IMG/VR virus record: IMGVR_UViG_3300030085_002431
Coordinates: 62,001-126,000 of that record
Reading direction: 5' to 3' (one strand)
Length of the DNA stretch: 64,000 nucleotides
This document shows, in pieces, positions 12,913 through 58,652 of the stretch. Under the pieces are notes generated by a model. That model ran no database searches, was not told the DNA's origin, and worked only from the letters and a program-made list of their open reading frames with translations. A program made the position numbers and the translations under genes. Position 1 is the first letter of the stretch. Each line of letters opens with the position of its first letter.

Positions 12913-13620
12913 ATGAAATCTTTTGCGGAATTTATTGATGAATCGAAGAGTGGTGATAGTTCTCTGCGTGACTGGTTTAGCAAGAGTTCTTCTGATGATG
13001 GCACCCCTGGTTGGGTTCAGTTGGGTGGCAAATATGCAGGGAAACCCTGTGCAAGACAACCAGGACAAAAGACCAAACCAAAGTGTGGGTCTTCAAAAAT
13101 GAAGAGAAACCTCTCAAAGGAAGAGGAAGAAAAGGCATTTAGACGCAAGAACCGTGAAGACGGTAATCCAGATCGCAGAGGTAAAGCAAAGAACGTTGCT
13201 ACTGAAGAAACTGTTCTGGAGAAAGCAGGTGAAAAGGATGCGTGCTATAAAAAGGTCAAGTCTCGTTATAGAGTTTGGCCAAGTGCATACGCATCTGGAG
13301 CACTTGTAAAATGTCGCAAAGTTGGTGCTGCGAACTGGGGTAATAAAACTAAGAAGGAAGACTTCTCCCCAAAAGCAACAGCACTAGTGGAGAGATATAC
13401 TAAATTACAGGAGAGAGGCAAAACTTATCACGTCCGTTTTCAGTGGAGAGGGAAGTACGAAGGTATCCAAATATTCTTCCCAAGTCTGACAACACCCACT
13501 AAAATGGAAGTGTCTGCCCAGATTGAAAAAATCTATCCTGGTGCAACAGTAATCTCTTTTGGTCCACACTTTAGAGACCCAACCCAACCATTACTACATG
13601 TAGGAGAAGACAACCCATGA
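12913..13620 (+). CDS. Conserved basic modular phage protein, putative internal head protein
   Basis: Starts MKSFAEFIDE (T4 capsid-targeting-like); contains DACYKKVKSRYRVWPSAYASGALVKCRK; TAAATA at 12887. Confidence 0.6.
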   Translation: MKSFAEFIDESKSGDSSLRDWFSKSSSDDGTPGWVQLGGKYAGKPCARQPGQKTKPKCGSSKMKRNLSKEEEEKAFRRKNREDGNPDRRGKAKNVATEETVLEKAGEKDACYKKVKSRYRVWPSAYASGALVKCRKVGAANWGNKTKKEDFSPKATALVERYTKLQERGKTYHVRFQWRGKYEGIQIFFPSLTTPTKMEVSAQIEKIYPGATVISFGPHFRDPTQPLLHVGEDNP

Positions 13621-13793
13621 ATCCTGATGAAATAACACTTGATTCTCTTTCCAAGACGTTTGAATACGAGAAACAAGTACGAGAAATCGAGGACTGTGAT
13701 GATATTAAAACAATCAAAAATATTTGTAAAGCATATATTAAGTTATATCTAAAACAGCAAGAAACAGTTGCTGCAATTGGTTTAATGAGTTAA
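13617..13793 (+). CDS. 58-aa helix-loop-helix protein, NblA-like (phycobilisome degradation adaptor candidate)
   Basis: Below the track cutoff. MNPDEITLDSLSKTFEYEKQVREIEDCDDIKTIKNICKAYIKLYLKQQETVAAIGLMS; AGGAGA upstream; ATGA overlap with the previous stop. Confidence 0.5.
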   Translation: MNPDEITLDSLSKTFEYEKQVREIEDCDDIKTIKNICKAYIKLYLKQQETVAAIGLMS

Positions 13794-13802
13794 AAATTTT
13801 TC

Positions 13803-15452: not shown

Positions 15453-15676
15453 TGGACCTCGGTGATGATTTTTCTTTTTCATTTCCTAAAGATAGAAAAT
15501 GTAGAGTTTGTGGAAAGGTGAAAGACTTAGAGACTGGATTCTACAAAACTAGAAAAGAAAAAGGAAGTTCGTCAGGTGCGTATTCATATGAGTGTAAGGA
15601 TTGCACAATTAGGAGAGTTTCCAGAAAAAAGAATAAAATAAAGAAGTTTATAGAGAGTGACTATCCAGACTGGTAA
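15452..15676 (+). CDS. Small zinc-finger protein (CxxC...CxxC)
   Basis: CRVCG...YECKDC; TGATG overlap with the gp17 stop. Confidence 0.6.
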   Translation: MDLGDDFSFSFPKDRKCRVCGKVKDLETGFYKTRKEKGSSSGAYSYECKDCTIRRVSRKKNKIKKFIESDYPDW

Positions 15677-15759
15677 ATGTTTCCCCAGTTTCCCCACTAA
15701 AAAGAGTCTGATTTCTAAATATTAGTAGACTAATATGAACTTCTTTAAGAGGGGACAAA

Positions 15760-18144: not shown

Positions 18145-18180
18145 TTTATTATTGATTAAAACATTAAGAGGAACCTATCG

Positions 18181-18831: not shown

Positions 18832-18865
18832 ATACTAGGACAAGACAGTCCAGTATTTCGTAGAG

Positions 18866-20512: not shown

Positions 20513-20542
20513 TAAATAGTAAAAGTTAATTATTTTTAAACT

Positions 20543-20737: not shown

Positions 20738-20770
20738 GTCTAAATAGAATATATCAGTACACATAGATAG

Positions 20771-34072: not shown

Positions 34073-34273
34073 ATGAAAATCCCTAGACAAAAGAAATCCA
34101 GAACGTATTACTACTTCTGGTCATTTATGGCACTTACCGTGTTCTTTGGACAACTATATGTTGGATATGGATACCGTCTGATGCATGGAAGTATTCTCGA
34201 TCTACTGGATAAAGTTGATGGAGTTCTTCTACATAAAAATGAAGTTGAAGATAACCATCGCAAGTATCTATGA
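34073..34273 (+). CDS. Small single-pass membrane protein
   Basis: Hydrophobic stretch YYYFWSFMALTVFFGQLYVGYGY. Confidence 0.55.
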   Translation: MKIPRQKKSRTYYYFWSFMALTVFFGQLYVGYGYRLMHGSILDLLDKVDGVLLHKNEVEDNHRKYL

Positions 34274-34413
34274 ACTGCGAAGTAACTTTATTCAAAGCAG
34301 GTCAGGTATTTAAAGAAAAGGTTGTTGCAAGGGATTACGAGGATGCACGTAAAGTTGCTCTTGCTCGTAATCCTGGAGCAACTGTAGTAGGTGTGAACGC
34401 AGTATTTAAGTAG
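34270..34413 (+). CDS. 47-aa hypothetical protein
   Basis: Not in the track. MNCEVTLFKAGQVFKEKVVARDYEDARKVALARNPGATVVGVNAVFK fills the gap exactly, with an ATGA overlap. Confidence 0.6.
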   Translation: MNCEVTLFKAGQVFKEKVVARDYEDARKVALARNPGATVVGVNAVFK

Positions 34414-35246: not shown

Positions 35247-35270
35247 AGGGGGTTCCGAACCCCCTTTTTT
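35247..35270 (+). terminator. Intrinsic terminator after regA
   Basis: AGGGGGTT-CCG-AACCCCCT followed by a T run. Confidence 0.85.
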
Positions 35271-35280
35271 AATGTCACCA

Positions 35281-35348
35281 TATAAATAGACATGGATGCC
35301 TTCGGGGTCCACACAAAAACAAACTCGCTTAATAAAGGAGCTAGAATA
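35281..35348 (+). promoter_or_regulatory. Late promoter TATAAATA plus a structured 5' leader of hsp20
   Basis: TATAAATA at 35281, then a GGATGCC-TTCG-GGGTCC hairpin, an A/C-rich spacer and an AAGGAG RBS. Confidence 0.6.
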
Positions 35349-35783
35349 ATGGGTAACCTCCAACGATGGAGTGCAGCAGACCTGCCTGCGCTCATGGAAA
35401 GAATCAACCGAAATAGTATCGGGATGGATGAGTACTTTGACCGTCTTTTTCACCTACATGAAAGTACCTCAAACTATCCGCCATATAACCTAGTGCAAGT
35501 TAATAATGTAGAGTCTAGACTTGAATTAGCACTAGCTGGATTCAAAAAAGAAGAAGTCAATGTCTACACGGAATACGGTAAACTCTTTATTGAAGGCAAG
35601 AAAGAGGATAAAGAAACACAGTCTTCATACGTCCACAAAGGTTTGGCTCAACGGTCGTTTACACGAACCTGGACTCTCAGTGACGACACGGAAATTGGAT
35701 CAGTTAATTTTGAAAATGGGCTTTTAGAGATTGTCCTTAAAAAAGTAGTACCAGATCATCATGCTCGTAAAGATTGGTTTTGA
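35349..35783 (+). CDS. hsp20: Small heat shock protein Hsp20 (IbpA-like)
   Basis: YPPYNL, ELALAGF, HKGLAQRSFTR, NGLLEI; ATG at 35349 follows AAGGAG. Confidence 0.95.
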   Translation: MGNLQRWSAADLPALMERINRNSIGMDEYFDRLFHLHESTSNYPPYNLVQVNNVESRLELALAGFKKEEVNVYTEYGKLFIEGKKEDKETQSSYVHKGLAQRSFTRTWTLSDDTEIGSVNFENGLLEIVLKKVVPDHHARKDWF

Positions 35784-36008: not shown

Positions 36009-36119
36009 ATGGCAATTTTCGCAACTATCGCATTTATTGGTTCAGCAATTTTCGGAGCATATCAACTAACACCCAAAACAGCAAAAGTAACTGTTGATGA
36101 CGAGTTACTTCCTTATTGA
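36009..36119 (+). CDS. 36-aa single-pass membrane micropeptide
   Basis: MAIFATIAFIGSAIFGAYQLTPKTAKVTVDDELLPY. Confidence 0.45.
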   Translation: MAIFATIAFIGSAIFGAYQLTPKTAKVTVDDELLPY

Positions 36120-36120
36120 A

Positions 36121-36189
36121 TAAATAAAACTGAATATCGTCGCCGCAGGGGACCGACTGGCAAAATCCAGTTGAATCCCCTCTTTTTTT
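36121..36189 (+). ncRNA. Candidate late small RNA (about 55-60 nt) ending in a terminator hairpin
   Basis: TAAATA at 36121, no ORF, GC-rich 5' segment ATATCGTCGCCGC, stem AGGGGA..CGACTGG/CCAGTTG..TCCCCT, then T7. Confidence 0.4.
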
Positions 36190-36199
36190 GTATTATAAT
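36171..36199 (+). promoter_or_regulatory. Sigma70-type promoter for ndhD, overlapping the terminator
   Basis: TTGAAT-N17-TATAAT, 15 nt before the ndhD ATG. Confidence 0.65.
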
Positions 36200-36214
36200 A
36201 GTTAGTGAAACTTT

Positions 36215-37774
36215 ATGAACCATACTATGCCTTGGTTGAGTTTATCTATTCTAGTTCCTATCGTTGCTGCTTTATTCATCCCCTTCATTCCAGATAAAGG
36301 TGATGGAAAGGTTGTCAGATGGTATGGACTATCGACTACATTAGTTACATTTTTAATTACTGTAGCAGCATATCTAACTGGATACGACCCAAGTGTAAGT
36401 GGTCTCCAGATGGTAGAGAAGGTTTCTTGGATTCCCTCACTGGGTCTGCAGTGGTCTGTGGGGGCAGATGGACTGTCTATGCCACTAATCCTTCTAACTA
36501 GTTTTATCACTAGTCTTGCTGCCCTTGCCGCATGGCCTCTACGATTCAAACCTAAACTATTTTACTTCCTTCTTTTGTTGATGGATGGTGGGCAGATTAT
36601 GGTTTTTGCGGTACAGGATTTGATTCTTTTCTTCCTGTCATGGGAACTAGAACTTGTTCCTGTTTACATGATGCTCTCTATTTGGGGAGGAAAGAAACGT
36701 CAATATGCTGCTACAAAGTTTATTATTTACACAGCAGGTAGTTCTTTGTTTATTCTTCTGGCAGGACTTGCCATGGGATTCTGGGCATCTAATGGTGCTC
36801 CAAACTTTGACTACACATATCTAATGCAGCAGGGATTCCCAAAGAGTTTTCAACTTTGGTGTTATGCTGGATTCTTAATTGCCTTTGGTGTAAAACTCCC
36901 TATTGTTCCATTACATACATGGTTACCTGATGCACACGGGGAAGCAACTGCGCCAGTCCATATGCTTCTGGCAGGTATCCTTCTGAAGATGGGTGGATAT
37001 GCACTGCTGCGATTTAACTGTCAACTTCTTCCAGAAGCACATACAGTATTTGCACCTATCTTGATTGTCCTTGGTGCTGTGAATATCATTTATGCAGCAT
37101 TGACATCATTTGCACAACGCAACCTCAAACGCAAGATTGCATATAGTTCTATCAGTCACATGGGATTTGTACTTATCGGTATTGGGAGTTATAGTGCTCT
37201 TGGAACCAGTGGTGCTATGCTCCAGATGGTAAGTCACGGTTTGATTGGTGCATCTCTGTTCTTCCTGGTGGGTGCAACCTATGACAGGACCCATACTCTT
37301 GAACTTGCTGAGATGGGTGGTGTGGGCAAGAGTATGAAGATTATGTTTGCAATGTGGGTTGTCTGTACAATGGCATCTTTGGCACTTCCAGGAATGAGTG
37401 GATTTGCAAGTGAACTGATGGTCTTCACTGGATTTGCAACTGACACAATGTATAGTGTGCCGTTCCGTGTATTCATTTGTATTCTTTCTGCCATTGGTGT
37501 TATTCTTACACCCATTTATTTGCTATCGATGCTTCGTGAGATATTCTTTGGCAAAGAGAATAAGGAACTTGTCAATCATACAAACCTAGTTGATGCAGAA
37601 CCAAGGGAAATATATATTATTAGTTGTCTTCTTGTTCCTATCATCGGACTTGGAGTGTTCCCAAGAATTATGACTGATACATATCAGAGTTCTATCGAAG
37701 CACTAGTTGAAAGAGATAAGGCACCATTGGTAAGACCCCATCTAGTTAGAATGTATACACCCCCAACAGTATGA
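36215..37774 (+). CDS. ndhD: NAD(P)H-quinone oxidoreductase (NDH-1) subunit 4, cyanobacterial NdhD1/D2-type
   Basis: Multi-TM protein. [84 protein letters not shown]. Confidence 0.96.
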
Positions 37775-38316
37775 ACCTAGATATTTGTGATAAGATAGCA
37801 GAAAAACTTATATTAGAAACTAATACTAGTAAACGCACATCTTTCTTTAAAGGTGACCACAATGTATATTCTATGAGTATTGCATTTACAAAAGATGGAA
37901 TTGAAGAATTGCTAGAAAATTATGGTTACTTAAAACCTTTTATTGATGAAGCTGTTGATACTGATACTTACAATGTTTTTTGGTTAAATTCATTGATAAT
38001 TGGAAACGGGGAAGAGATACAACGACATAGAGATGCTACAATAAGTAGATATACTAAAGTTCCCATCTTGGCAGATAGAGTAACTGTACTTTATGTAAAA
38101 GTTCCTAGTGATATGATTGGTGGAGAACTTAAAATATATCATTATCGTCGTATAGAAACAGTAACACCAGAGAAGGGGAAAATGGTAATTTTTAAAAATC
38201 AAACTCATTCTATTGATGAAGTTACTACAGATAGTGAGAGAATTAGTTTAGTTCTTGAGAGTTACTATCTTGATGAAATAGACTTTCCTAAAATACCCAA
38301 GTATGATAAAGAATAA
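37771..38316 (+). CDS. 2OG-Fe(II) oxygenase-like protein
   Basis: HRD (HxD), VTVLYV, GGEL, P.KGKMVIF...H, RISLV. Confidence 0.7.
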
Positions 38317-38320: not shown

Positions 38321-38359
38321 AAGGGGAGGTTTGACACCTCCCTTTTTTATTGCTAAAAT
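38321..38359 (+). promoter_or_regulatory. Fused terminator hairpin and sigma70 promoter
   Basis: AGGGGAGGT-TTGAC-ACCTCCC.. hairpin plus T run; TTGACA(38331)-N17-TAAAAT(38354). Confidence 0.8.
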
Positions 38360-38711: not shown

Positions 38712-38934
38712 TGGAATTGCTCTGATTACTGAGATTGAAGAAGTTGCTGCTTCAATTCCTGGTGAACCAGATTGTAAATTTATAAATCCCTTTGAAATAA
38801 AGGGTGACACCCTGGTTCCTTGGTTGTATGATTACACTGACGAACGCACCGTCATGATTAGTTCTGACAGGATTCTTACTCTTGTAGAACCAAAGAAAAC
38901 ATTCCTTGAAAAGTACAAAGACCTTACGAAATGA
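38674..38934 (+). CDS. Conserved hypothetical protein upstream of gp43
   Basis: IPGEPDCK.INP...PWL...SSDRILTLVEP. Confidence 0.7.
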   Translation: MEETALMVAVLNSGIALITEIEEVAASIPGEPDCKFINPFEIKGDTLVPWLYDYTDERTVMISSDRILTLVEPKKTFLEKYKDLTK

Positions 38935-41435
38935 GATTCTATACCAACGTCTACGAAAAGTTCAATAAGATTCTAGTTCGTGGTTATGACAACGGTAGAT
39001 ACTTTCAGACAGAGGAGGATTTTAATCCTACATTCTTCGTCACTTCAAAGAAAAAGACACAGTATAAAACTTTAGATGGAACTGTGGTTGAACCGATTCA
39101 ACCTGGTTCCATTTCTGATTGTAGGGAATTTATCAAGAAGTATTCAGAGGTTGAGGGATTTGCTGTATTTGGCAATGATAACTTCAAGGCACAGTATATC
39201 TCTGAGAAATATCCAGAGGACGAAATTAAGTTTGATATTAACAAAATCAGACTGTTTACGATTGACATTGAGGTCTCTGCAGAAAACGGATTCCCTAATG
39301 TATTTGAATGTGCAGAAGAACTTCTGACTATCACACTTCAAAACTATGCTACTAAGCAGATTATCTGTTTTGCAAATAACCGTGACTACGAGAATACTCG
39401 TAAGGATGTCATGTATGTGAAATGTGATAGTGAACAGGACATGGCACTGAAGTTCTTGGCATTCTGGGAGCAGAATACTCCTGATGCAATCACTGGATGG
39501 AACTGTGAACTGTATGATATTCCATACATTGCTGGAAGGTTTGAACGTATTCTTGGAACAAAAGACACCCGTCGTCTTTCTCCATGGAAGAATGTTCGAC
39601 GTAAAGAATTTGTGATTCAGGGACGTGAACAAATCTCTTATGAGATTGCTGGTGTTTCTGTTATTGATTATCTTGACCTCTATAAGAAGTTTACTTACAA
39701 GGCACAAGAATCATATCGATTGGACCACATCGCATTTGTGGAACTTGGACAGAAGAAGTTGGACCACTCTGAGTTTGATACCTTTAAGGACTTCTATACA
39801 AAGGACTGGCAGAAGTTTGTTGACTACAACATCAAAGACGTTGAACTTGTTGACCGTCTGGAAGACAAGATGAAACTCATTGAACTCTGTATGACTATGG
39901 CATACGATGCGAAGATTAACTATAATGATGTTTTCTTCCAGGTACGTACATGGGATGCAATTATCTACAATTATCTGAAGAAAAGGAATATCGTAATTCC
40001 TCCAAAAGATAGGAGTGAGAAGAATGAGAAGTATGCAGGTGCGTATGTTAAGGAACCGATTCCTGGGGTATATGATTGGGTTGTCAGTTTTGACCTCAAT
40101 AGCCTGTACCCTCACCTTATTATGCAGTACAATATCTCACCAGAGACACTCCAGGATTCGAGGCATCCCTCAGCAACAGTTGATAAGATACTTAATCAAC
40201 AGGTGACATTTGAGATGTATAAGGACAGTGCGGTTTGTGCTAATGGAGCAATGTATCGCAAGGATGTCCGTGGATTCCTACCTGAACTGATGGAGAAGAT
40301 GTATGGGGACAGAGTTGTATTCAAGAAACGAATGCTTGAAGCAAAGCAGCAGTACGAGAAGACTCCTACTAAAGCACTTGAGAAAGAAATCGCACGTTGT
40401 AACAACATTCAAATGGCGAAGAAGATTTCTCTTAACTCTGCTTATGGNNNNNNNNNNATTGGTAATCAATACTTCAGGTATTACAAACTAGCAAACGCAG
40501 AAGCAATTACTTATTCTGGTCAGGTATCAATCCGTTGGATTGAAAATAAAATGAATAAGTATCTAAATAGATTGTTGAAAACAAGTGATGTCGATTATGT
40601 TATTGCTTCTGATACTGATAGTATCTACCTTAACATGGGTCCTTTGGTCGAAATTGTATACAAGGGAAGAGAAAAAACTAATGAAAAGGTTGTCAATTTC
40701 CTTGACAAGATCTGTAAAATGGAACTTGAGCCTTATATTGAAAGTTCTTACCAAGAACTGGCGGACTATGTGAACGCATACGACCAAAAGATGCAGATGA
40801 AACGGGAAAACATTGCCAACCGTGGAATTTGGACAGCAAAGAAACGATACATCCTTAATGTATGGGATAGTGAAGGTGTTCGATACGAAGAACCTAAACT
40901 AAAAATCATGGGCATTGAAGCAGTAAAGTCTTCAACTCCTGCTCCATGCCGTAAGATGATTAAGGATGGACTCAAAATTGCTATGACTAAGACAGAAGAT
41001 GAGTTGATTGATTTTATTGAAGAGTCGAGAAAGCAATTTAATCAATATGGACCTGAGGAAATTTCTTTTCCTAGGACAGCATCTGATGTCATGAAGCATA
41101 AAGCACATGCAACAATCTACGGAAAGGGAACACCAATCCATGTAAGAGGTGCATTGCTTTATAATCACATGATTAAAGAAAGGGGATTGGATAAGAAGTA
41201 TGCTTCTATTCAGAATGGTGAGAAAATTAAGTTCTGCTATTTGAAACTTCCAAATCCTATTCGTGAGAATGTTATATCTTTCATCTCTGATTTCCCTGTG
41301 GAACTCGGACTAGACAAATATATCGACTATGACCTACAATTCTCAAAGGCATTCCTTGATCCCATGAAGGTCGTTTTGGATGCAATTGGTTGGAAAGTCG
41401 AACGAACCGTTACCCTAGAATCATTTTTTTCCTAA
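38931..41435 (+). CDS. gp43: Family B DNA polymerase gp43 (spans an assembly gap)
   Basis: DIE exonuclease motif, SFDLNSLYP, KKISLNSAYG, SDTDS, KKRY; Ns at 40448-40457. Confidence 0.97.
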   Translation: MRFYTNVYEKFNKILVRGYDNGRYFQTEEDFNPTFFVTSKKKTQYKTLDGTVVEPIQPGSISDCREFIKKYSEVEGFAVFGNDNFKAQYISEKYPEDEIKFDINKIRLFTIDIEVSAENGFPNVFECAEELLTITLQNYATKQIICFANNRDYENTRKDVMYVKCDSEQDMALKFLAFWEQNTPDAITGWNCELYDIPYIAGRFERILGTKDTRRLSPWKNVRRKEFVIQGREQISYEIAGVSVIDYLDLYKKFTYKAQESYRLDHIAFVELGQKKLDHSEFDTFKDFYTKDWQKFVDYNIKDVELVDRLEDKMKLIELCMTMAYDAKINYNDVFFQVRTWDAIIYNYLKKRNIVIPPKDRSEKNEKYAGAYVKEPIPGVYDWVVSFDLNSLYPHLIMQYNISPETLQDSRHPSATVDKILNQQVTFEMYKDSAVCANGAMYRKDVRGFLPELMEKMYGDRVVFKKRMLEAKQQYEKTPTKALEKEIARCNNIQMAKKISLNSAYXXXXIGNQYFRYYKLANAEAITYSGQVSIRWIENKMNKYLNRLLKTSDVDYVIASDTDSIYLNMGPLVEIVYKGREKTNEKVVNFLDKICKMELEPYIESSYQELADYVNAYDQKMQMKRENIANRGIWTAKKRYILNVWDSEGVRYEEPKLKIMGIEAVKSSTPAPCRKMIKDGLKIAMTKTEDELIDFIEESRKQFNQYGPEEISFPRTASDVMKHKAHATIYGKGTPIHVRGALLYNHMIKERGLDKKYASIQNGEKIKFCYLKLPNPIRENVISFISDFPVELGLDKYIDYDLQFSKAFLDPMKVVLDAIGWKVERTVTLESFFS
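40448..40457. other. Scaffold gap (10 N)
   Basis: Run of N inside polymerase motif B. Confidence 0.95.
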
Positions 41436-50757: not shown

Positions 50758-50771
50758 TAAGTTGATGGTAT

Positions 50772-51340: not shown

Positions 51341-51352
51341 TCGAGAAGAAAA

Positions 51353-51766: not shown

Positions 51767-51780
51767 TACCCTCCTGTAGA

Positions 51781-52773
51781 ATGAGTTTCGTTGATTCCAA
51801 GTACATTGGACTGGTATCTTCACGGTTAGTTAAGTTTGCCAAGAAGAAAGAAGGTCTTTATAATTTTCGATGCCCCTACTGTGGAGACAGTCAGAAGCAG
51901 AAGAATAAAGCACGAGGGTATATTTACAAATTAAAAAACGACCATAACTTTAAGTGTCATAATTGTGGTGTTTCTAGAACATTTACAAACTTTCTTAAGG
52001 ATATGGATACTGTTCTCTATGACCAGTATGTTATGGAGAGATATAAGAATGGACTGACTGGAAGGGGAAGTCAGACAAAGAACCCAGAGATTAAAATTGA
52101 CAAGCCGAGTTTTGCCAAGAAGGCATTTAATCTTCCAAGAATCTCTCAACTAAATAAAGAACACTTGGCAAGAAAATATCTAGAAGACAGGAAAATTCCA
52201 GAAGAATATTTCCGTGATTTGTATTTTTGTGAGAACTTTAAGGAGTGGACAAACACTCAAAAACATACTTTCGATAAGGTAGACAAAGACGAACCACGAA
52301 TCATTATCCCACTCATCAACGAGGGAAAAATCATAGGGTTTCAAGGTCGAAGTTTACAGAAGAAATCAAAAATTAAATATATCACTATAATGTTGGAGGA
52401 GGATGCACCGAAGATTTACGGACTCGATAGAATCAAAAAAGGAGATAGAATCTATGTTACTGAAGGACCTTTCGACAGCACGTTCATTCGCAACTCGATT
52501 GCTCTTTGCGGAGCTGACGGTGATATTGGCAAGTGGGTTACTGGCGATACTGTTTGGATTTATGATAACGAACCCCGCAATCGAGAGATTGTCTCCAGAA
52601 TCGAACGTACAATCAACAACGGTGCAAGGGTAGTAATTTGGCCAAAAGATATCCAAGAGAAGGATATTAATGATATGTTTTTATCTGGACTTAACGTACA
52701 GTCCGTGGTAGAATCGAACATATTCTCTGGTTTAGAAGCAAAACTTAAATTTAACACTTGGAAGAAAGTATGA
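51781..52773 (+). CDS. gp61: DNA primase gp61
   Basis: CPYCGDS...CHNC zinc finger, TEGPFDS, YDNEPRN, KDIND. Confidence 0.96.
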   Translation: MSFVDSKYIGLVSSRLVKFAKKKEGLYNFRCPYCGDSQKQKNKARGYIYKLKNDHNFKCHNCGVSRTFTNFLKDMDTVLYDQYVMERYKNGLTGRGSQTKNPEIKIDKPSFAKKAFNLPRISQLNKEHLARKYLEDRKIPEEYFRDLYFCENFKEWTNTQKHTFDKVDKDEPRIIIPLINEGKIIGFQGRSLQKKSKIKYITIMLEEDAPKIYGLDRIKKGDRIYVTEGPFDSTFIRNSIALCGADGDIGKWVTGDTVWIYDNEPRNREIVSRIERTINNGARVVIWPKDIQEKDINDMFLSGLNVQSVVESNIFSGLEAKLKFNTWKKV

Positions 52774-55031
52774 GTAACGGTACAAAAGTAATTAAACGGA
52801 ATGGTCGTGTTGAGTCCCTTGACCTGAATAAGATTCATCTCATGGTTGATGAAGCATGTAAGGACCTCGCAGGGGTCTCTGCTTCTCAGGTTGAAATGCA
52901 ATCTGGTATTCAATTTTATGATGGCATCACAACTGCTGAGATTCAAGAAATCTTGATTAAGAGTGCATCTGACTTGATTGATTTGGAAAATCCAAACTAT
53001 CAGTTTGTTGCTGCAAGGCTTTTGCTTTTTGCAGTTAGAAAATCCCTAAATGGTAAGGTACAGGATCATCCTGGTTTCGTTGACCATATTACTAAGTGTG
53101 TAGAACTTGGAGTCTATGATGCTTCAATCTTTACTAACTATACTGAAGAGGAACTTACCAAATGTGGTAATTACCTTAATCATCACCGTGACTATCTGTT
53201 CACTTATGCAGGTCTACGTCAAGTCGTTGACAAGTACCTGGTGCAAGATAGAAGCACGGGGAAGGTTTACGAGACTCCCCAGTTTATGTACATGATGATT
53301 GCTCTGACTATTTTTGCAGAGTATCCAAAAGAAACGAGAATCTCTTACGTCAAAAAGTATTATGACGCAATCTCCAAACACAAAATCAACATTCCCACAC
53401 CTATCATGGCAGGAGTGCGAACTCCACTTCGACAATTTNNNNNNNNNNCTGATATGGCTATCGGCAGATATGTTGCACAAAGGGCGGGAATCGGTATCAA
53501 CGCAGGCAGAATCCGTGGCATCAACGCTAAAATCAGAGGCGGAGAGGTACAACACACAGGTGTGGTCCCCTTCCTTAAAAAGTTTGAATCAACTGTGCGA
53601 TGCTGCACACAAAACGGCATCAGAGGTGGTTCAGCTACAGTCCACTTTCCTATCTGGCATCAGGAAATCGAAGACATCATCGTCCTGAAGAACAACAAAG
53701 GAACTGAAGACAATCGTGTTCGTAAACTCGATTACTCAATCCAAATCTCTAAACTCTTCTATGAACGATTCATCACCGATGGAGAAATCTCACTTTTCTC
53801 TCCGCACGACGTTCCTGGTCTGTATGATGCTTTTGGTACTCCTGGATTTGACGACTTGTATGTGGGTTATGAACGAGATCAGTCTATTCCAAGAAAGACT
53901 ATCGGAGCTCAAGAACTCATTCTGGACCTTCTGAAAGAACGTGCAGAGACTGGTCGTTTGTATCTTATGAACATTGACCACTGCAACTCCCACTCTTCCT
54001 TCAAGGATAAAGTGGAGATGAGTAACCTGTGTCAGGAAATTACACTCCCCACCAAACCACTCCAACATATCGATGACCCAGAGGGTGAAATTGCTCTTTG
54101 TATTCTTTCTGCAGTCAATGTTGGTAAGGTGAAAGATAATGATGAGTTTGAAGAACTCTGCAGTCTTGCTGTACGTGGTCTTGAAGAACTTATTGACTAC
54201 CAAGATTATCCTGTAGTTGCCGCAGAGAAGTCCACAAAGGCACGTCGTTCCCTTGGAGTAGGATTTATTGGTCTGGCACATTATCTTGCCAAACTAGGTT
54301 TCTCCTACGACTCTCAAGAAGCATGGGATGCCGTTCATGGTCTTTCAGAATCTTTCCAGTATTACCTCCTTAAGGCATCAAATGAGGTAGCAAAAGAAAA
54401 AGGTGCTTGTGAATACTTTAATCGGACCAAGTACTCAGATGGACTTCTTCCGATTGATACATATAAGCAGGATGTCGATGAAGTTTCATCTATAGAATAT
54501 CAACATGATTGGGAGTCTCTTAGAGTATCTATCTCCAAATACGGACTGCGACACAGCACGTTGTCCGCACAGATGCCATCGGAGAGCAGTTCCGTTGTGT
54601 CAAATGCAACAAATGGAATCGAACCACCTAGAGGATACTTGTCCGTTAAAAAGAGCAAAAAAGGACCCCTTAAGCAGATTGTTCCGCAGTATACCTCGTT
54701 AAAGAATAACTACACACTGTTGTGGGATATGACCTCTAATGAGGGTTATATCAATGTCGTTGCAGTGATGCAAAAATTCTTTGACCAGGCAATTTCTGGC
54801 AACTGGAGTTATAATCCAGAGAACTATCCAGACAATGAGGTTCCTGTTTCAGTAATGGCACAAGACTTCTTGACAACATACAAGTTGGGATGGAAAACTA
54901 GTTACTATCAGAATACATATGACAACAAAACTGATGAGGTAAAGGAGGCATCAGACAAAGCAGACGCAGACCTAATCGCAGAAATTTTAAGTTCAGAAGG
55001 AGAAGAAGATTGTGAATCCTGTAAAATTTAG
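52770..55031 (+). CDS. nrdA: Ribonucleotide reductase class Ia alpha subunit (spans an assembly gap)
   Basis: ATP cone VIKRNG, PTPIMAG, SNLCQEI, C-terminal CESC; Ns at 53439-53448. Confidence 0.97.
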   Translation: MSNGTKVIKRNGRVESLDLNKIHLMVDEACKDLAGVSASQVEMQSGIQFYDGITTAEIQEILIKSASDLIDLENPNYQFVAARLLLFAVRKSLNGKVQDHPGFVDHITKCVELGVYDASIFTNYTEEELTKCGNYLNHHRDYLFTYAGLRQVVDKYLVQDRSTGKVYETPQFMYMMIALTIFAEYPKETRISYVKKYYDAISKHKINIPTPIMAGVRTPLRQFXXXXDMAIGRYVAQRAGIGINAGRIRGINAKIRGGEVQHTGVVPFLKKFESTVRCCTQNGIRGGSATVHFPIWHQEIEDIIVLKNNKGTEDNRVRKLDYSIQISKLFYERFITDGEISLFSPHDVPGLYDAFGTPGFDDLYVGYERDQSIPRKTIGAQELILDLLKERAETGRLYLMNIDHCNSHSSFKDKVEMSNLCQEITLPTKPLQHIDDPEGEIALCILSAVNVGKVKDNDEFEELCSLAVRGLEELIDYQDYPVVAAEKSTKARRSLGVGFIGLAHYLAKLGFSYDSQEAWDAVHGLSESFQYYLLKASNEVAKEKGACEYFNRTKYSDGLLPIDTYKQDVDEVSSIEYQHDWESLRVSISKYGLRHSTLSAQMPSESSSVVSNATNGIEPPRGYLSVKKSKKGPLKQIVPQYTSLKNNYTLLWDMTSNEGYINVVAVMQKFFDQAISGNWSYNPENYPDNEVPVSVMAQDFLTTYKLGWKTSYYQNTYDNKTDEVKEASDKADADLIAEILSSEGEEDCESCKI
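53439..53448. other. Scaffold gap (10 N)
   Basis: Run of N after RQF; the expected SC-containing segment is not visible. Confidence 0.95.
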
Positions 55032-56211
55032 AGTCAGTTCGGACGATGAGTTTAATAAAAAGATGACTAGCGTTAAAGGCATGACTGTCTTTAACACAGA
55101 TAAGACAGAACTTAAAAAACAACCTATGTTCTTTGGTGCTCCTCTTGGAGTTCAAAGATATGATTCCTACAAGTATCCTATCTTTGATAAACTAACCACT
55201 CAGCAACTAGGTTATTTTTGGAGACCAGAAGAAGTCTCCCTTCAAAAAGACAGGTCAGATTACAAGACCCTTCGTCCTGAACAAAAGCATATCTTTACTT
55301 CTAATCTGAAGTATCAGATTCTGCTTGACTCTGTTCAGGGTCGTGGTCCTGGTATGGCATTCATTCCTTATTGCTCTCTTCCTGAACTGGAAGCATGTAT
55401 GGAAGTCTGGGGATTCATGGAAATGATTCATTCCCGTTCCTATACTTACATCATTAAGAATGTCTACCCTGATGCTGCAGAGGTATTTGATACTATTCTT
55501 GATGATGAAAGAATCATTGATCGTGCTAAGAGTGTTACTCAGGCATATGATGATTTCATTCAAGCAGCACAACAGTATGGTAATACTAGTGAGTGGGAGA
55601 TGGCACAAGAGGGTGCTGGATATTTCCGTGAAAACCGTAAAGAACTAAAGAGAAAACTATATAGAGCAGTTGCCAACGTCAATATCCTAGAGGGGATTAG
55701 ATTCTATGTTTCGTTTGCTTGCTCGTTTGCGTTTGGTGAACTCAAACTTATGGAAGGATCCGCTAAAATCATCTCTCTCATCGCAAGAGACGAAAATCAG
55801 CATCTTGCAATTACTCAAAACATCCTCAACAAGTGGAGTTCAGGGGATGACCCAGAGATGGCAGAAATTGCTAAAGAGGAAGAAGAGTGGGTGATTGGTG
55901 CTTTCCGCAACTGTGTTAATGAAGAGAAGGAATGGGCAAACTATCTGTTCAAAGATGGTTCCATGATTGGTCTTAATGACAAACTTCTCCATAATTATGT
56001 TGAGTGGGTTGCTAATCGTCGTATGAAGTCGATTGGTCTCAAACCAGTGTTTGATATTCCTGCTAAGAACAATCCTCTTCCTTGGACAGAGCATTGGATT
56101 TCTTCAAAAGGTCTTCAAGTTGCTCCTCAAGAAACAGAAGTTGAGTCTTATGTTGTTGGTGGAATCAAGCAAGATGTCAAGAAAGACACATTTAGTGGAT
56201 TCAAACTCTGA
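55012..56211 (+). CDS. nrdB: Ribonucleotide reductase class Ia beta subunit
   Basis: FWRPEEV, EMIHSRSY, LEGIRFYVSF, RDENQH, VAPQETE. Confidence 0.97.
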   Translation: MNPVKFRVSSDDEFNKKMTSVKGMTVFNTDKTELKKQPMFFGAPLGVQRYDSYKYPIFDKLTTQQLGYFWRPEEVSLQKDRSDYKTLRPEQKHIFTSNLKYQILLDSVQGRGPGMAFIPYCSLPELEACMEVWGFMEMIHSRSYTYIIKNVYPDAAEVFDTILDDERIIDRAKSVTQAYDDFIQAAQQYGNTSEWEMAQEGAGYFRENRKELKRKLYRAVANVNILEGIRFYVSFACSFAFGELKLMEGSAKIISLIARDENQHLAITQNILNKWSSGDDPEMAEIAKEEEEWVIGAFRNCVNEEKEWANYLFKDGSMIGLNDKLLHNYVEWVANRRMKSIGLKPVFDIPAKNNPLPWTEHWISSKGLQVAPQETEVESYVVGGIKQDVKKDTFSGFKL

Positions 56212-56231
56212 CAAATTGAATATTTTGTGGT

Positions 56232-56261
56232 TAAATAGGGGTAGTTAATACCCCTATTTTT
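56232..56261 (+). promoter_or_regulatory. Hairpin/terminator with a late-promoter core in its 5' arm, abutting the glgP start
   Basis: TAAATA at 56232; AAATAGGGGTA-GTTAA-TACCCCTATTT; ATG at 56262. Confidence 0.6.
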
Positions 56262-58652
56262 ATGCCAACTACTGATATACGCAGTGGAATCAATGAACGT
56301 CTCCTTTATACATTAGGAAAAAGACCAGAGGATGCCACTGTAAATGATGTATATAAAGCATTATGCTATGCCGTAAGGGATAGAATGGTTTCCGATTATC
56401 TTGAAGAGAAACCAGCACAGAAAGAAGTTGCATATCTCTCTGCTGAGTTCTTGATTGGACCTCAGTTAGGAAATAATCTTTTCAATCTAGATATACAGAA
56501 AGAAGCAGAGACTGCGGTAAAAGAATACGGATATACCCTTGATGATGTCTTAGAGGAGGCATGTGAACCTGGACTAGGAAATGGTGGTCTGGGTCGTCTT
56601 GCTGCTTGCTACATTGAGTCCTTGTCAACTCTCAAGGTTCCTGCAGTTGGATATGGAATCCGATATAAGTATGGTATTTTTAAACAGAGTATCAAAGATA
56701 ACAAGCAGGTAGAAGTAACGGATAACTGGTTACATGGTGATTGGCCATGGGAACTTTGCTATCCTGACCAGTCGGTTACAGTCTCATTTGGTGGGAAGGT
56801 AGAGCACTACACTTCAGATAAGAATAACTACAGAACTCGTTGGGTTCCTGAAGAGCAAGTAGTTGCTGTCCCTTATGATGTTTTGCAGGCAGGATATAAG
56901 GTCAATAAGTGCAATAAACTTAGACTATGGAGAGCAGATGCTATTGATGTATTTGATTATTCTGCTTTCAATAGTGGGGATTACTTTGGTTCAGTTGAAA
57001 ATAGAGTAGCATCAGAAACTATCTCTAAGGTTCTTTATCCAAATGATGAAACTACACAGGGAAAAGAACTGAGACTCAAGCAACAGTTCTTCTTTGTTAG
57101 TGCTTCTATCCAAGATATGGTAAGAAGTCTCAAGGAAAGAAATCTACCACTGGAAGATTTCCATGAGCATTATCAAGTTCAATTAAATGATACCCACCCA
57201 TCAGTTGCAGTTGCTGAACTGATGAGAATTCTCACTGATGAGAATCATATGGATTGGGATTTGGCATGGGATATCACAAACAAGTCTATTGCATATACAA
57301 ACCATACACTACTTCCAGAGGCACTGGAGAAGTGGGACCTAACCTTGTTTGGTAACTTACTCCCAAGGCACCTAGAAATAATCTATGAAATCAATCATAG
57401 GTTCTTGCAGATTGTTCGACTGAGATATCCTGGTGATGATGATATGCTTAGAAAGTTGTCCATCATTGACGAGTCTGGAAAACGTTCAGTTCGGATGGCA
57501 CACCTTGCAACAGTTGGGTCTCATCATGTGAATGGTGTTGCAGAAATCCATTCTGATTTGGTGAAGACAAAACTAATGCCAGAGTTCTATGCTCTTTGGC
57601 CTCACAAGTTTACTAATGTTACTAATGGTGTGACACCACGTCGATGGTTGGCATGTTCAAATCCAGACCTAGCAAAAGTTCTTAATCACTATGTTGGACC
57701 TGAGTGGGTATCAGATACTAGTCTCTTAAGTCACTTGGAAAATCATGTTGATGATAGTGAACTTCTAGAGAAACTAAACTTAACAAAACTAGAGGGAAAA
57801 CGTAAACTGTCTCGATATATACAAAACACACTTGGTATATCGGTTGATCCGACAAGTATGTTTGACGTACAGGTAAAGAGGATTCATGAGTACAAACGAC
57901 AGCATCTCCTTGCTTTATGGATTGTTAGTAGGTATATGTACATTAAGAATCACAAAGACGATTATGTTGTTCCTCGTACAATAATCTTTGGTGGTAAGGC
58001 AGCACCTGGATATTGGATGGCAAAACTAATCATCCAATTTATTTGCAACCTTGCCGAGACAATCAATTCCGACCCAGACATGGATGGAAAGTTGCGTGTT
58101 GTATTCTTACCTAACTACAGTGTTAAGTTGGGTGAGAAGGTTTATCCTGCTGCAGATTTGTCGGAGCAAATTTCTACTGCTGGTAAGGAAGCATCTGGTA
58201 CTGGTAATATGAAGTTCCAAATGAACGGTGCTTTAACTATTGGAACACTTGATGGTGCAAACGTTGAGATTAGGGACCTTGTAGGTGAAGAAAACTTCTT
58301 CTTGTTTGGTAACACTGAACCAGAGATTGAAGAACTTTGGAAGAATGGATATAATCCTAAACTCTTTATGAGTGCTGGATTGTTTAATTCTCTTGAACTT
58401 ATTTCCTCAGGTCATTTCTCCAATGGTGATAAAGAAGTATTCAAACCTCTGGTCTTGGATATCATGAACAAAGACCCATTCTGTGTTGCTGCTGACTTTG
58501 ATGATTATTGTCGTGCTCAAAGTGTAGTAGATACATGTTGGGGTAATAGAGAAGAGTGGAATAAAAAAGCACTCATTAATATTGCACGTTCTGGTTTCTT
58601 TTCTTCTGATAGGTCTATTGAAGACTACTGTGATAATATCTGGAAGATGTAG
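56262..58652 (+). CDS. glgP: Glycogen/alpha-glucan phosphorylase (GT35, PLP-dependent)
   Basis: YLSAEFLIG, GLGNGGLGRLAAC, ELRLKQQFF, QLNDTHP, YTNHTLLPEALE, VKRIHEYKRQ, EASGTGNMK (PLP lysine), TLDGANVE, FSSDRSI. Confidence 0.97.
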   Translation: MPTTDIRSGINERLLYTLGKRPEDATVNDVYKALCYAVRDRMVSDYLEEKPAQKEVAYLSAEFLIGPQLGNNLFNLDIQKEAETAVKEYGYTLDDVLEEACEPGLGNGGLGRLAACYIESLSTLKVPAVGYGIRYKYGIFKQSIKDNKQVEVTDNWLHGDWPWELCYPDQSVTVSFGGKVEHYTSDKNNYRTRWVPEEQVVAVPYDVLQAGYKVNKCNKLRLWRADAIDVFDYSAFNSGDYFGSVENRVASETISKVLYPNDETTQGKELRLKQQFFFVSASIQDMVRSLKERNLPLEDFHEHYQVQLNDTHPSVAVAELMRILTDENHMDWDLAWDITNKSIAYTNHTLLPEALEKWDLTLFGNLLPRHLEIIYEINHRFLQIVRLRYPGDDDMLRKLSIIDESGKRSVRMAHLATVGSHHVNGVAEIHSDLVKTKLMPEFYALWPHKFTNVTNGVTPRRWLACSNPDLAKVLNHYVGPEWVSDTSLLSHLENHVDDSELLEKLNLTKLEGKRKLSRYIQNTLGISVDPTSMFDVQVKRIHEYKRQHLLALWIVSRYMYIKNHKDDYVVPRTIIFGGKAAPGYWMAKLIIQFICNLAETINSDPDMDGKLRVVFLPNYSVKLGEKVYPAADLSEQISTAGKEASGTGNMKFQMNGALTIGTLDGANVEIRDLVGEENFFLFGNTEPEIEELWKNGYNPKLFMSAGLFNSLELISSGHFSNGDKEVFKPLVLDIMNKDPFCVAADFDDYCRAQSVVDTCWGNREEWNKKALINIARSGFFSSDRSIEDYCDNIWKM

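What the first reader, a model, noticed from the sequence alone, without database searches (positions are those of the whole stretch)
13617..58652. Possible reserve-mobilisation / dark-infection programme: GlgP + NdhD + NblA-like
Seen: three dispersed genes in one scaffold. Known: in cyanobacteria, glycogen breakdown via GlgP and the OPP pathway with electron entry through NdhD1/D2-type NDH-1 is the night-time respiratory route, and NblA recycles antenna nitrogen; many cyanophages replicate poorly in the dark. Inference: this phage encodes the entry step (GlgP) and the specificity subunit of the exit step (NdhD) of that route, allowing replication on stored reserves under darkness or low light. 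Caveat: two scaffold gaps separate ndhD from glgP.
Basis: inference. Interest (0 to 1): 0.75.

Follow-up and report, generated by a model that had tools for sequence, protein, structure and literature searches.

The report
Cyanophage glycogen phosphorylase and NdhD genes
A large marine cyanobacterial virus really does carry host-derived genes for glycogen breakdown (GlgP) and for an NDH-1 respiratory/cyclic-electron subunit (NdhD1), plus a possible antenna-degradation gene. They are separate add-on genes already seen in a cultured relative, and nothing yet shows they form a dark-infection programme.

Summary
The three genes are real and physically linked. The window is part of a 250.6-kb T4-like cyanomyovirus scaffold rated 100% complete by CheckV. 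Both N-gaps lie inside conserved core genes. Independent contigs and reads close them: 4 nt in the DNA polymerase and 52 nt in NrdA. glgP (56262-58652) is a full-length alpha-glucan phosphorylase with its catalytic motifs intact. It is 64-66% identical to every picocyanobacterial GlgP tested and lacks their conserved C-terminal tail. ndhD (36215-37774) is an NdhD1-type subunit, 79% identical to the host gene next to ndhF1. The 58-aa ORF (13617-13793) is a helix-loop-helix protein predicted to form a dimer. Its link to NblA rests only on weak profile similarity and on its restriction to Synechococcus phages. The same genome also encodes zwf, gnd, talC, cp12, ndhP, PTOX, petE, petF, psbA and psbD. 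Both genes co-occur in three complete genomes, including the cultured phage S-SCSM2R. However, each has its own flanking hairpins. ndhD occurs without glgP, and glgP occurs without ndhD at ndhD's usual site. The most likely reading is two independent host-derived metabolic genes that extend the known pentose-phosphate and electron-transport sets. The dark-infection idea is plausible but untested. Novelty is modest.

The parts
13617..13793 (+). 58-aa 'NblA-like' ORF. Its start overlaps the stop of the upstream ORF (ATGA), and it lies 10 nt upstream of the large terminase gene.
   Evidence: phrog_27081, E 8.5e-26. No Pfam hit. AlphaFold2 gives helix 13-26, a loop, then helix 30-54, mean pLDDT 79.5. 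Homodimer model scores 0.42 against a best control of 0.01. hhalign against bona fide NblA gives P 0.015.
35292..35783 (+). Small heat-shock protein gene, preceded by a hairpin terminator (35247-35265) and a TATAAATA late-promoter-like site (35281-35288). It marks the regA-to-gp43 variable region.
   Evidence: PF00011, E 8e-14.
36150..36199 (+). Hairpin plus T-run, followed by a sigma-70-like promoter (TTGAAT, 17 nt, TATAAT, 36171-36199) directly upstream of ndhD.
   Evidence: The same layout (hairpin, T-run, TATAAT or TAAAAT) is conserved upstream of ndhD in the 17 related loci examined.
36215..37774 (+). ndhD: NDH-1 subunit 4, NdhD1 type.
37771..38316 (+). 2OG-Fe(II) oxygenase gene overlapping the ndhD stop by 4 nt. 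It is absent from this position in S-SCSM2R.
   Evidence: PF13640, E 9e-9.
38321..38345 (+). Intrinsic-terminator-like hairpin that closes the ndhD-oxygenase unit.
   Evidence: Fold energy -14.6 kcal/mol, z -3.5.
38931..41435 (+). DNA polymerase (gp43) containing scaffold gap 1 (40448-40457).
52758..55031 (+). nrdA containing scaffold gap 2 (53439-53448).
55012..56211 (+). nrdB, immediately upstream of glgP.
   Evidence: PF00268, E 4e-54.
56233..56259 (+). Stable 11-bp hairpin plus U-run, ending just before the glgP start codon.
   Evidence: Fold energy -18 kcal/mol, z -3.6; sequence.
56262..58652 (+). glgP: alpha-1,4-glucan (glycogen) phosphorylase.
58657..58686 (+). Terminator-like hairpin (58657-58673) followed by TATAAATA (58679-58686).
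62941..63381 (+). SegE-like GIY-YIG homing endonuclease gene downstream of glgP.
   Evidence: PF19835, E 4e-55. The same neighbour follows glgP in CACFII010000001.1.

Best explanation
glgP and ndhD are two independently acquired, host-derived auxiliary metabolic genes of a clade of large (about 230-250 kb) T4-like cyanomyoviruses.

Shown:
- Both proteins are full length and keep nearly all universally conserved residues.
- Both trace to picocyanobacterial genes.
- Both are embedded in contiguous phage DNA.

Inferred for GlgP:
- It phosphorolyses host glycogen to glucose-1-phosphate.
- Host phosphoglucomutase and debranching enzyme, which the phage lacks, pass this on as glucose-6-phosphate.
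- The phage's own Zwf and Gnd then act on it, with TalC alongside and CP12 holding the Calvin cycle off.
- The products are NADPH and ribose-5-phosphate for deoxynucleotide synthesis.
- Because the phage enzyme lacks the host-type C-terminal tail, it probably escapes host control.

Inferred for NdhD:
- It inserts into the host NDH-1M core to form or replenish NDH-1L.
- This sustains cyclic or respiratory electron flow and ATP supply during infection.
- The phage's NdhP, PTOX, PetE and PetF act in the same chain.

The 58-aa protein is a dimeric helix-loop-helix protein of Synechococcus phages. It may be a divergent NblA that marks phycobilisomes for proteolysis.

The three genes help in the same general direction but are not one regulated unit.
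For: GlgP:
- PF00343 and TIGR02093 match at full length.
- The GLGNGGLGRLAAC, NDTHP, FGGKAAPGY and KEASGTGNMKF (pyridoxal-phosphate lysine) motifs are present.
- 229 of 236 columns invariant in 42 cellular GlgPs are retained.
- It is 61-66% identical to the main GlgP of all 41 picocyanobacterial genomes searched.
- Phage GlgPs form one clade (support 100) that is sister to picocyanobacterial GlgP.

NdhD:
- The host ortholog lies beside ndhF1 and is 79% identical. The paralogs are 54% and 38% identical.
- The phage clade (support 100) groups with the host NdhD1 sequences, apart from the D2-like and D4-like paralogs.
- 334 of 358 host-invariant columns are retained.
- The conserved sequence blocks [24 protein letters not shown] and GMSGF..E align with T. 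elongatus NdhD1.

Pathway context:
- Pfam confirms zwf, gnd, talC, cp12, PTOX, petE and psbA in the same genome.
- gnd overlaps ndhP, and petE, PTOX and zwf are contiguous.
- No phosphoglucomutase or GlgX is present.

Independence:
- Each gene has its own flanking hairpins, and ndhD has its own conserved promoter.
- glgP sits in three different sites in different phages.
- ndhD-only isolates exist.

Literature:
- Host glycogen phosphorylase is one of 12 host proteins still made during S-SM1 infection (work cited in PMC10452541).
- In other phages glgP overlaps or directly follows nrdB or regA, which fits expression with replication and nucleotide genes.
Against: - There are no expression, enzymatic or physiological data for any phage GlgP or NdhD.
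- The hairpin abutting the glgP start could terminate transcripts from nrdB, so how glgP is transcribed here is unclear.
- Deleting the C-terminal extension lowered the activity of Synechocystis GlgP1, so loss of the tail need not mean a more active enzyme.
- Phage NdhD lacks about 26 C-terminal residues of the host protein, and its assembly into host NDH-1 is assumed.
- In S-SCSM2R and G122 glgP is followed by an overlapping glycosyltransferase-like gene. In S-SCSM2R it also lies beside envelope-sugar genes, which hints at another use.
Confidence: 0.62

Rival explanations
1. One reading: the genes form a programme selected for infection in darkness or low light. Glycogen is burnt through the oxidative pentose phosphate pathway, and electrons enter NDH-1L and leave through PTOX or the oxidases, so that the phage can replicate without photosynthesis.
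For: - The phage encodes a gene at nearly every step: glgP, zwf, gnd, talC, cp12, ndhD, ndhP, PTOX and petE.
- The NdhD is the respiratory/cyclic D1 type, not the CO2-uptake D3/D4 type.
- glgP and ndhD occur together in three complete genomes.
- gnd overlaps ndhP, and PTOX adjoins zwf.
Against: - The same genome carries psbA, psbD, hli and petF.
- The two genes are separate cassettes, and each occurs without the other.
- Every step is equally useful in the light once CP12 shuts down the Calvin cycle.
- Run and sample names were coded, so depth and diel distribution could not be tested.
Confidence: 0.15
2. Phage NdhD1 acts by competition. By occupying the shared NDH-1M core it displaces NdhD3/NdhD4. 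This lowers CO2 uptake, in line with the phage's shutdown of carbon fixation, and shifts the complex pool towards cyclic flow.
For: - The host genome has three NdhD paralogs that, from established knowledge of cyanobacterial NDH-1, share one NDH-1M core.
- The phage copy is strictly D1 type.
- The phage also carries cp12.
- ndhD has its own conserved sigma-70-like promoter, suggesting early expression by host RNA polymerase.
Against: This is pure inference. NdhD3/D4 need their own NdhF3/F4 and Cup partners, and no stoichiometry data exist. It is compatible with the best explanation rather than exclusive of it.
Confidence: 0.1
3. The phosphorylase serves glycan or envelope metabolism: synthesis or remodelling of a polysaccharide, or supply of glucose-1-phosphate for nucleotide sugars, rather than energy metabolism.
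For: - In S-SCSM2R and G122 glgP is followed by an overlapping glycosyltransferase-like gene.
- In S-SCSM2R it also lies near kdsA/kdsB and many glycosyltransferases.
- Glucose-1-phosphate is the precursor of UDP- and dTDP-glucose.
Against: - Here and in CACFII010000001.1 the gene follows nrdB, and in three other contigs it follows regA.
- It is an ortholog-like sister of host GlgP with all phosphorolysis motifs.
Confidence: 0.08
4. Assembly artefact: ndhD and glgP come from different co-occurring phages that were joined at conserved motifs.
For: - Both gaps sit in highly conserved motifs where word depth jumps 40- to 500-fold.
- Many assemblies break at that site.
- No independent contig of this same population carries both genes.
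Against: - Independent contigs cross each gap at 99.8-100% identity, and they overlap each other by 8.67 kb.
- Gene order across both gaps equals S-SCSM2R.
- A gap-free 238.9-kb contig and a cultured isolate both carry the two genes.
Confidence: 0.03

Closest known systems
Synechococcus phage S-SCSM2R (PQ898602.1; BMC Biol 2025, PMC12801897)
   Same: - It is a cultured 244-kb cyanomyovirus with NdhD (86% identity), a 'carbohydrate phosphorylase' (77%) and a 55-aa 'NblA' (48%).
- It also carries zwf, gnd, talC, cp12, ndhP, AOX/PTOX, psbA and psbD.
- It is syntenic with the window from the neck genes to nrdB.
   Different: - Core proteins are only 55-85% identical.
- glgP sits in the petF/peroxiredoxin-to-psbA island about 70 kb from ndhD, not after nrdB.
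- No 2OG oxygenase follows ndhD.
- The paper calls ndhD the first in a cyanophage genome, and its main text never mentions glycogen or this phosphorylase gene.
Picocyanobacterial GlgP (main paralog of Synechococcus and Prochlorococcus)
   Same: 64-66% identity over the full length, all catalytic motifs, and a sister position in the tree.
   Different: All 22 phage proteins stop at ...IWK(M/I). They lack the conserved host tail V.P(L/M).VEITCDV(R/N), and the host reading frames extend further at the N-terminus. The equivalent extension is a thioredoxin-sensitive switch in Synechocystis GlgP1.
Cyanobacterial NdhD1 of NDH-1L (e.g. Thermosynechococcus, 6HUM chain D; Synechococcus KORDI-100 ndhD beside ndhF1)
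   Same: 759 bits to 6HUM_D, aligned from end to end. 79% identical to the host ortholog. The conserved sequence blocks are kept.
   Different: The phage proteins are 503-520 aa against 532-563 aa in hosts, with about 26 C-terminal residues missing. The gene stands alone, with no ndhF1 partner.
Known cyanophage carbon and electron-transport genes (cp12, talC, zwf, gnd; PTOX, petE, petF, ndhI, ndhP)
   Same: The logic is the same: host-derived genes, inserted between core modules, that push carbon to the pentose phosphate pathway and support electron flow (reviewed in PMC10452541).
   Different: glgP adds the step upstream of Zwf. It has been noted only in passing, as having homologs on phage genomes or viral fragments. 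ndhD adds a large membrane subunit rather than a small or peripheral one.
NblA (PF04485) and the marine cyanophage NblAs of Nadel et al. and the 2025 Nature study
   Same: - About 58 aa, predicted helix-loop-helix and predicted dimer.
- Found only in Synechococcus phages.
- Homologs in S-TIM5 and S-SCSM1 were called NblA, the S-SCSM1 one by HHpred.
   Different: - No Pfam hit in any of 85 family members.
- No NblA found by profile search of solved structures, and Foldseek found no match at all.
- Only a weak profile-profile signal, P 0.015.
- The phage NblAs tested experimentally belong to other lineages.

Membership tests
Alpha-glucan/glycogen phosphorylase (GT35; PF00343, TIGR02093) | Full-length match above the curated cut-offs | tested here: met
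   PF00343 scores 1033 bits over profile positions 2-713 of 713. TIGR02093 scores 1124 bits against a cut-off of 553.
Alpha-glucan/glycogen phosphorylase (GT35; PF00343, TIGR02093) | Pyridoxal-phosphate lysine motif and phosphate/glucan-binding motifs | tested here: met
   KEASGTGNMKF, GLGNGGLGRLAAC, NDTHP and FGGKAAPGY are present. 229 of 236 universally invariant columns are kept.
Alpha-glucan/glycogen phosphorylase (GT35; PF00343, TIGR02093) | Substrate: glycogen rather than maltodextrin | not testable with these tools
   The NCBIfam GlgP and MalP equivalog models score equally (889 and 888 bits), and both are below their cut-offs.
Cyanobacterial GlgP (host ortholog group) | Groups with picocyanobacterial GlgP to the exclusion of other bacteria | tested here: met
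   Phage plus picocyanobacterial clade has support 100. The phage clade is the sister of the host clade, not nested in it.
Cyanobacterial GlgP (host ortholog group) | Cyanobacteria-specific C-terminal extension | tested here: not met
   Absent from all 22 phage sequences; seen in all 13 main-paralog host C-termini examined.
NdhD1/D2 class of NDH-1 subunit 4 | Closer to NdhD1 than to NdhD3/D4 | tested here: met
   - NF002713 scores 949 bits against a cut-off of 827.
- 6HUM_D (NdhD1) scores 759 bits and 6TJV_D (NdhD3) 299 bits.
- Identity to the three KORDI-100 paralogs is 79%, 54% and 38%.
- The tree agrees.
NdhD1/D2 class of NDH-1 subunit 4 | Conserved sequence blocks of the antiporter-like fold | tested here: met
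   The blocks [24 protein letters not shown] and GMSGF..E align with T. elongatus NdhD1. Their role in proton translocation is taken from established knowledge of complex I, not tested here.
NdhD1/D2 class of NDH-1 subunit 4 | Assembles with NdhF1 into NDH-1L | not testable with these tools
   No ndhF was seen in the window or among the AMGs mapped from S-SCSM2R, though the whole genome was not searched for it. The complex exceeds the size limit of the complex predictor.
NblA (PF04485) | Match to the family profile | tested here: not met
   - No hit at E <= 10 for the ORF.
- 0 of 85 family members hit PF04485 at E <= 1.
- No NblA chain was found by profile search of PDB sequences.
NblA (PF04485) | Profile-profile similarity to bona fide NblA | tested here: inconclusive
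   hhalign gives P 0.015 and score 16.3 over 33 columns in the expected register. This is above all 100 column shuffles (maximum 14.7) and above the reversed alignment (12.6). The reported probability is only 3%.
NblA (PF04485) | Helix-loop-helix monomer of about 60 aa that forms a dimer | tested here: met
   The AlphaFold2 model has two helices, pLDDT 79.5. The homodimer score is 0.42 against a best control of 0.01. That mark was reached by 20 of 30 solved homodimers and by 1 of 23 proteins solved as monomers. Foldseek found no PDB match. The fold is too simple to be specific.
NblA (PF04485) | Occurs where phycobilisomes exist, and degrades them | tested here: inconclusive
   All 25 phage records with a homolog are Synechococcus phages or cyanophages isolated on Synechococcus hosts. 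Function could not be tested.
Single co-regulated, co-inherited module (the 'programme') | Shared transcription unit or obligate co-occurrence | tested here: not met
   - The genes are 18.5 kb apart here and 70-75 kb apart in relatives.
- Each is flanked by its own hairpins.
- ndhD-only isolates exist.
- glgP replaces ndhD in the regA-to-gp43 region of G128, G129 and G131.

The most novel reading that the evidence does not exclude
A clade of large cyanomyoviruses encodes a nearly self-sufficient, light-independent energy route. A GlgP stripped of the host's C-terminal regulatory tail releases glycogen carbon whatever the cell's redox state. Phage Zwf and Gnd turn that carbon into NADPH. Phage NdhD1 and NdhP rebuild NDH-1L, and phage PTOX drains plastoquinol to oxygen. 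The proton motive force and deoxynucleotide supply are thereby kept up at night or at depth, which lets these phages finish infections that other cyanophages abort in the dark.
Probability: 0.15. Interest if true: 0.75.

Novelty: new member of a known kind. Interest (0 to 1): 0.45.

Why it matters
Cyanophages are known to shut the Calvin cycle and boost the pentose phosphate pathway. Where the glucose-6-phosphate comes from has mostly been assumed.

A phage-encoded glycogen phosphorylase would supply that missing first step:
- It is widespread, with at least 197 viral contigs and one monophyletic phage clade.
- It is catalytically intact.
- It lacks the host's regulatory tail.

It would also make the question testable in a cultured system, S-SCSM2R on Synechococcus WH7803. 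A phage NdhD1 likewise offers a handle on how viruses tune cyclic and respiratory electron flow.

If the dark-infection reading were right, it would change estimates of night-time and deep-euphotic viral mortality of picocyanobacteria.

Tried and rejected
- The pattern-based scan of species genomes returned only Proteobacteria at 52-56% identity. That wrongly suggested a non-host origin for glgP. A direct search of 41 picocyanobacterial genomes showed 61-66% identity to their main GlgP, and the tree settled the matter.
- For the 58-aa ORF, Pfam, NCBIfam, profile searches of PDB sequences and Foldseek all found nothing NblA-like.
- PF04485 found almost nothing in picocyanobacteria. Bona fide NblAs therefore had to be taken from other cyanobacteria.
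- Circular shifts proved an invalid null for hhalign.
- I looked for one independent contig of the same population carrying both genes. None was found, because assemblies break in NrdA.
- The large contigs behind L038, L039 and L122 are not held, so they could not be searched.
- Run and sample names are coded, so depth, latitude and diel distribution could not be examined.
- RNA runs hold too little of the stretch to judge expression.
- The NMNAT-like ORF (47136-48308) has no Pfam support, so it is not used in the argument.

Full report
**What the window is.**
- The 64-kb window is bases 62001-126000 of a single 250,613-bp scaffold, JGI 3300030085 Ga0183739_1000001. It is an IMG/VR virus record that CheckV rates 100% complete, with 38% G+C and three 10-N gaps.
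- Almost all genes are on the + strand.
- They run from neck, terminase, sheath, portal and capsid genes through the replication genes to nrdA and nrdB.
- The closest cultured relative is Synechococcus phage S-SCSM2R (244 kb, host WH7803). The window is syntenic with it from about 101.6 to 163.5 kb, at 55-85% protein identity.

**The gaps, tested first.**
- Gap 1 (40448-40457) interrupts the DNA polymerase in motif B (NSAYG|.IGN). Compared with the S-SCSM2R polymerase, one residue is missing.
- An independent Tara contig (ERZ907638 k127_72760, 86.7 kb, 99.8-99.9% identical) runs from far upstream through ndhD and across gap 1. It is 6 nt shorter there than the scaffold with its 10 N, so about 4 nt are missing. 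It encodes an intact 832-aa polymerase.
- Gap 2 (53439-53448) interrupts NrdA, and about 18 residues are missing.
- Contig Ga0211506_1000075 (39 kb) is 100% identical on both flanks. It fills gap 2 with 52 nt and continues through nrdB, glgP and beyond.
- Contigs of four public runs were laid on 52500-58400. Loose ends at the two gap edges join into the same 52 nt, coding ASCVLVDVDDTLDSIFSS.
- Word depth jumps from about 15-60 to 1,400-9,000 just there. The break is therefore a graph collapse at a motif shared by many co-occurring phages. Several other assemblies stop at the same place.
- The two bridging contigs overlap each other by 8.67 kb.
- Contigs from two runs bridge nrdB into glgP, and glgP depth equals the phage baseline.
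- No independent contig of this population holds both genes, but the order across both gaps is that of S-SCSM2R.
- I consider linkage established beyond reasonable doubt.

**glgP (56262-58652).**
- It is a full-length alpha-glucan phosphorylase by Pfam and TIGRFAM.
- The best solved relative is an 855-aa alpha-1,4-glucan phosphorylase (9wvu, 1006 bits). The glycine loop, NDTHP, FGGKAAPGY and KEASGTGNMKF (pyridoxal-phosphate lysine) motifs are all present.
- A pattern-based scan of species genomes first returned only Proteobacteria at 52-56% identity. That was a sampling artefact.
- Every one of 41 picocyanobacterial genomes has a GlgP that is 61-66% identical over the full length.
- In a tree of 64 sequences the 22 phage proteins form one clade (support 100). 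That clade is sister to the main picocyanobacterial GlgP (joint support 100). A second cyanobacterial paralog and the Proteobacteria fall outside.
- This points to a single old capture from the host lineage.
- 229 of 236 columns invariant in 42 cellular enzymes are kept.
- One consistent difference stands out. All phage proteins end at ...DYC..IWK(M/I). All 13 main-paralog host C-termini examined continue with a conserved tail, V.P(L/M).VEITCDV(R/N).
- In Synechocystis GlgP1 the cyanobacterial C-terminal extension is a redox switch. Reduced thioredoxin inhibits the enzyme and oxidation activates it. Removing the extension gave the low-activity form (bioRxiv 10.1101/2022.11.21.517384).
- What loss of the tail does in the phage enzyme is therefore open, but the enzyme cannot be regulated through that tail.
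- The phage has no phosphoglucomutase and no GlgX-type debranching enzyme.

**ndhD (36215-37774).**
- It scores above the cut-off of the NdhD model NF002713.
- It aligns end to end with Thermosynechococcus NdhD1 of NDH-1L at 759 bits. The NdhD3 of the CO2-uptake complex scores 299 bits.
- In Synechococcus KORDI-100 the best match (79%) is the ndhD next to ndhF1, downstream of a LysR regulator. The other paralogs are 54% and 38% identical.
- Twenty phage NdhDs form one clade (support 100) that groups with the host NdhD1 sequences, apart from the D2-like and D4-like paralogs.
- 334 of 358 host-invariant columns and the conserved sequence blocks are kept.
- Phage proteins are 503-520 aa against 532-563 aa in hosts.

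**The 58-aa ORF (13617-13793).**
- It overlaps the stop of the upstream ORF and precedes the large terminase, as does S-SCSM2R ORF118, which is annotated NblA.
- It belongs to phrog_27081 and to a family with 234 representatives at 50% identity.
- None of 85 members hits Pfam NblA at E <= 1. Profiles of the family find no NblA among PDB sequences. Foldseek finds nothing.
- Against 17 bona fide NblAs taken from other cyanobacteria, hhalign gives P 0.015 in the expected register. This is better than 100 column shuffles and better than the reversed alignment, but the probability is only 3%.
- The model is a helix-loop-helix.
- A homodimer is predicted with score 0.42 against a best control of 0.01. 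That mark was reached by 20 of 30 solved homodimers and by 1 of 23 proteins solved as monomers.
- All 25 phage records with a homolog are Synechococcus phages or cyanophages isolated on Synechococcus hosts. The S-TIM5 and S-SCSM1 homologs have been called NblA, the S-SCSM1 one by HHpred.
- Marine phage NblAs are known to score poorly against Pfam.
- Verdict: a reasonable candidate, not a demonstrated member.

**Context and regulation.**
- ndhD is preceded by a hairpin with a T-run and a TTGAAT-17-TATAAT promoter. It overlaps a 2OG-Fe(II) oxygenase gene, and a strong terminator follows.
- The hairpin, T-run and -10 arrangement is conserved upstream of ndhD in the 17 related loci examined. ndhD is therefore an insulated cassette with its own host-type promoter.
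- glgP follows nrdB after 50 nt. Those 50 nt fold into an 11-bp hairpin with a U-run abutting the start codon. A terminator and a TATAAATA motif follow the gene.
- Elsewhere glgP directly follows nrdB (CACFII010000001.1), overlaps regA (three IMG/VR contigs), or follows peroxiredoxin in the petF-to-psbA island (S-SCSM2R). In ERZ28548058 it lies between a ferredoxin gene and the photosystem II genes.

**Rest of the genome.**
- Pfam confirms psbA, petE, PTOX, zwf, gnd, talC and cp12.
- Homology to S-SCSM2R adds ndhP, psbD, hli, petF, thyX and phoH.
- gnd overlaps ndhP, and petE, PTOX and zwf are contiguous.

**Co-occurrence.**
- Both genes occur in three complete genomes:
  - this scaffold;
  - S-SCSM2R;
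  - IMGVR_UViG_3300030099_004448 (238,937 bp). That contig has no N between ndhD at 87.6 kb and glgP at 162.6 kb.
- S-8S53 and S-8S56 have ndhD but no glgP.
- Three contigs carry gp62-regA-glgP-sHsp-DUF6561-polymerase, with no ndhD where it sits here. Two of them were searched whole for ndhD and had none. They are 24-35% of a genome, so ndhD elsewhere in those genomes cannot be excluded.
- With pattern-limited scans, 197 viral contigs carry glgP and 58 stretches in 57 contigs carry ndhD.
- The genes are therefore frequent companions in one clade but not an obligate pair.

**Interpretation.**
- The most economical reading is two independent host-derived metabolic genes.
- GlgP adds the entry step to the known phage-boosted pentose phosphate route.
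- NdhD1 joins NdhP, PTOX, PetE and PetF in supporting electron flow.
- The literature already lists ndhD on viral metagenome fragments and in S-SCSM2R. It notes that host glycogen phosphorylase keeps being made during infection and has homologs on phage genomes or viral fragments.
- No paper found discusses a phage GlgP.
- The dark-infection programme is a legitimate hypothesis that the gene set permits, but no evidence here singles out darkness.
- The tail-less GlgP is the most useful new lead.

Noticed in passing
window 58560-58652 (GlgP C-terminus); host loci L123, L130-L148: All 22 phage GlgPs stop at ...IWK(M/I). All 13 main-paralog picocyanobacterial GlgP C-termini examined carry a further conserved tail, V.P(L/M).VEITCDV(R/N). 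The equivalent extension is a thioredoxin-sensitive switch in Synechocystis GlgP1.
   Followed up: partly
L335 (G128) 9867-16300; L336 (G131) 1752-9891; L337 (G129) 5114-12261: In three other viral contigs glgP sits between regA (overlapping it) and sHsp. This is the same regA-to-gp43 variable region that holds ndhD here. That region is a hot spot that carries either gene.
   Followed up: partly
window 36115-36214 and 17 related loci (L275-L322, L001): The hairpin, T-run and TATAAT/TAAAAT element upstream of ndhD is conserved across phages whose NdhDs are 82-92% identical to the window's. The hairpin sequences themselves differ between the loci.
   Followed up: partly
window 62941-63381; L039 10434-10844: A SegE-like GIY-YIG homing endonuclease gene lies just downstream of glgP in both genomes where glgP follows nrdB. 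It could have moved the cassette.
   Followed up: no
genome 127424-128630 (L341 424-1630) and 160479-162891 (L340 2480-4892): gnd overlaps the 44-aa ndhP-like ORF, and petE, PTOX and zwf are contiguous. Pentose-phosphate and electron-transport genes are thus physically paired twice outside the window.
   Followed up: partly
genome 163847-163856 (outside the window): The third scaffold gap lies inside psbD. This is another highly conserved gene where assemblies of mixed cyanophage populations break.
   Followed up: no
window 53288-53681, 54470-54666, 55258-55454: Word depth in four metagenome runs spikes 20- to 500-fold over the phage baseline at short stretches of nrdA and nrdB. These mark sequence shared with many co-occurring phages.
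   Followed up: partly
window 34073-34413: Two small ORFs (66 and 47 aa) match S-SCSM2R genes that lie at 223.9-224.2 kb, far from their position here. One of them is annotated there as an RNA polymerase inhibitor.
   Followed up: no
window 705-7345: Two large ORFs (445 and 1756 aa, the latter with a concanavalin-like lectin domain) have no counterpart in S-SCSM2R. They are probably fibre or host-recognition proteins.
   Followed up: no
proteins P0008 and P0030 (contigs of 481,176 and 482,719 bp; L038): Contigs with glgP (one of them pilon-polished) are about twice the genome size of this phage group. They may be concatemers.
   Followed up: no
window 47136-48308: This ORF is 42% identical to the S-SCSM2R protein annotated NMNAT but has no Pfam match here, so the annotation is unverified.
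   Followed up: partly
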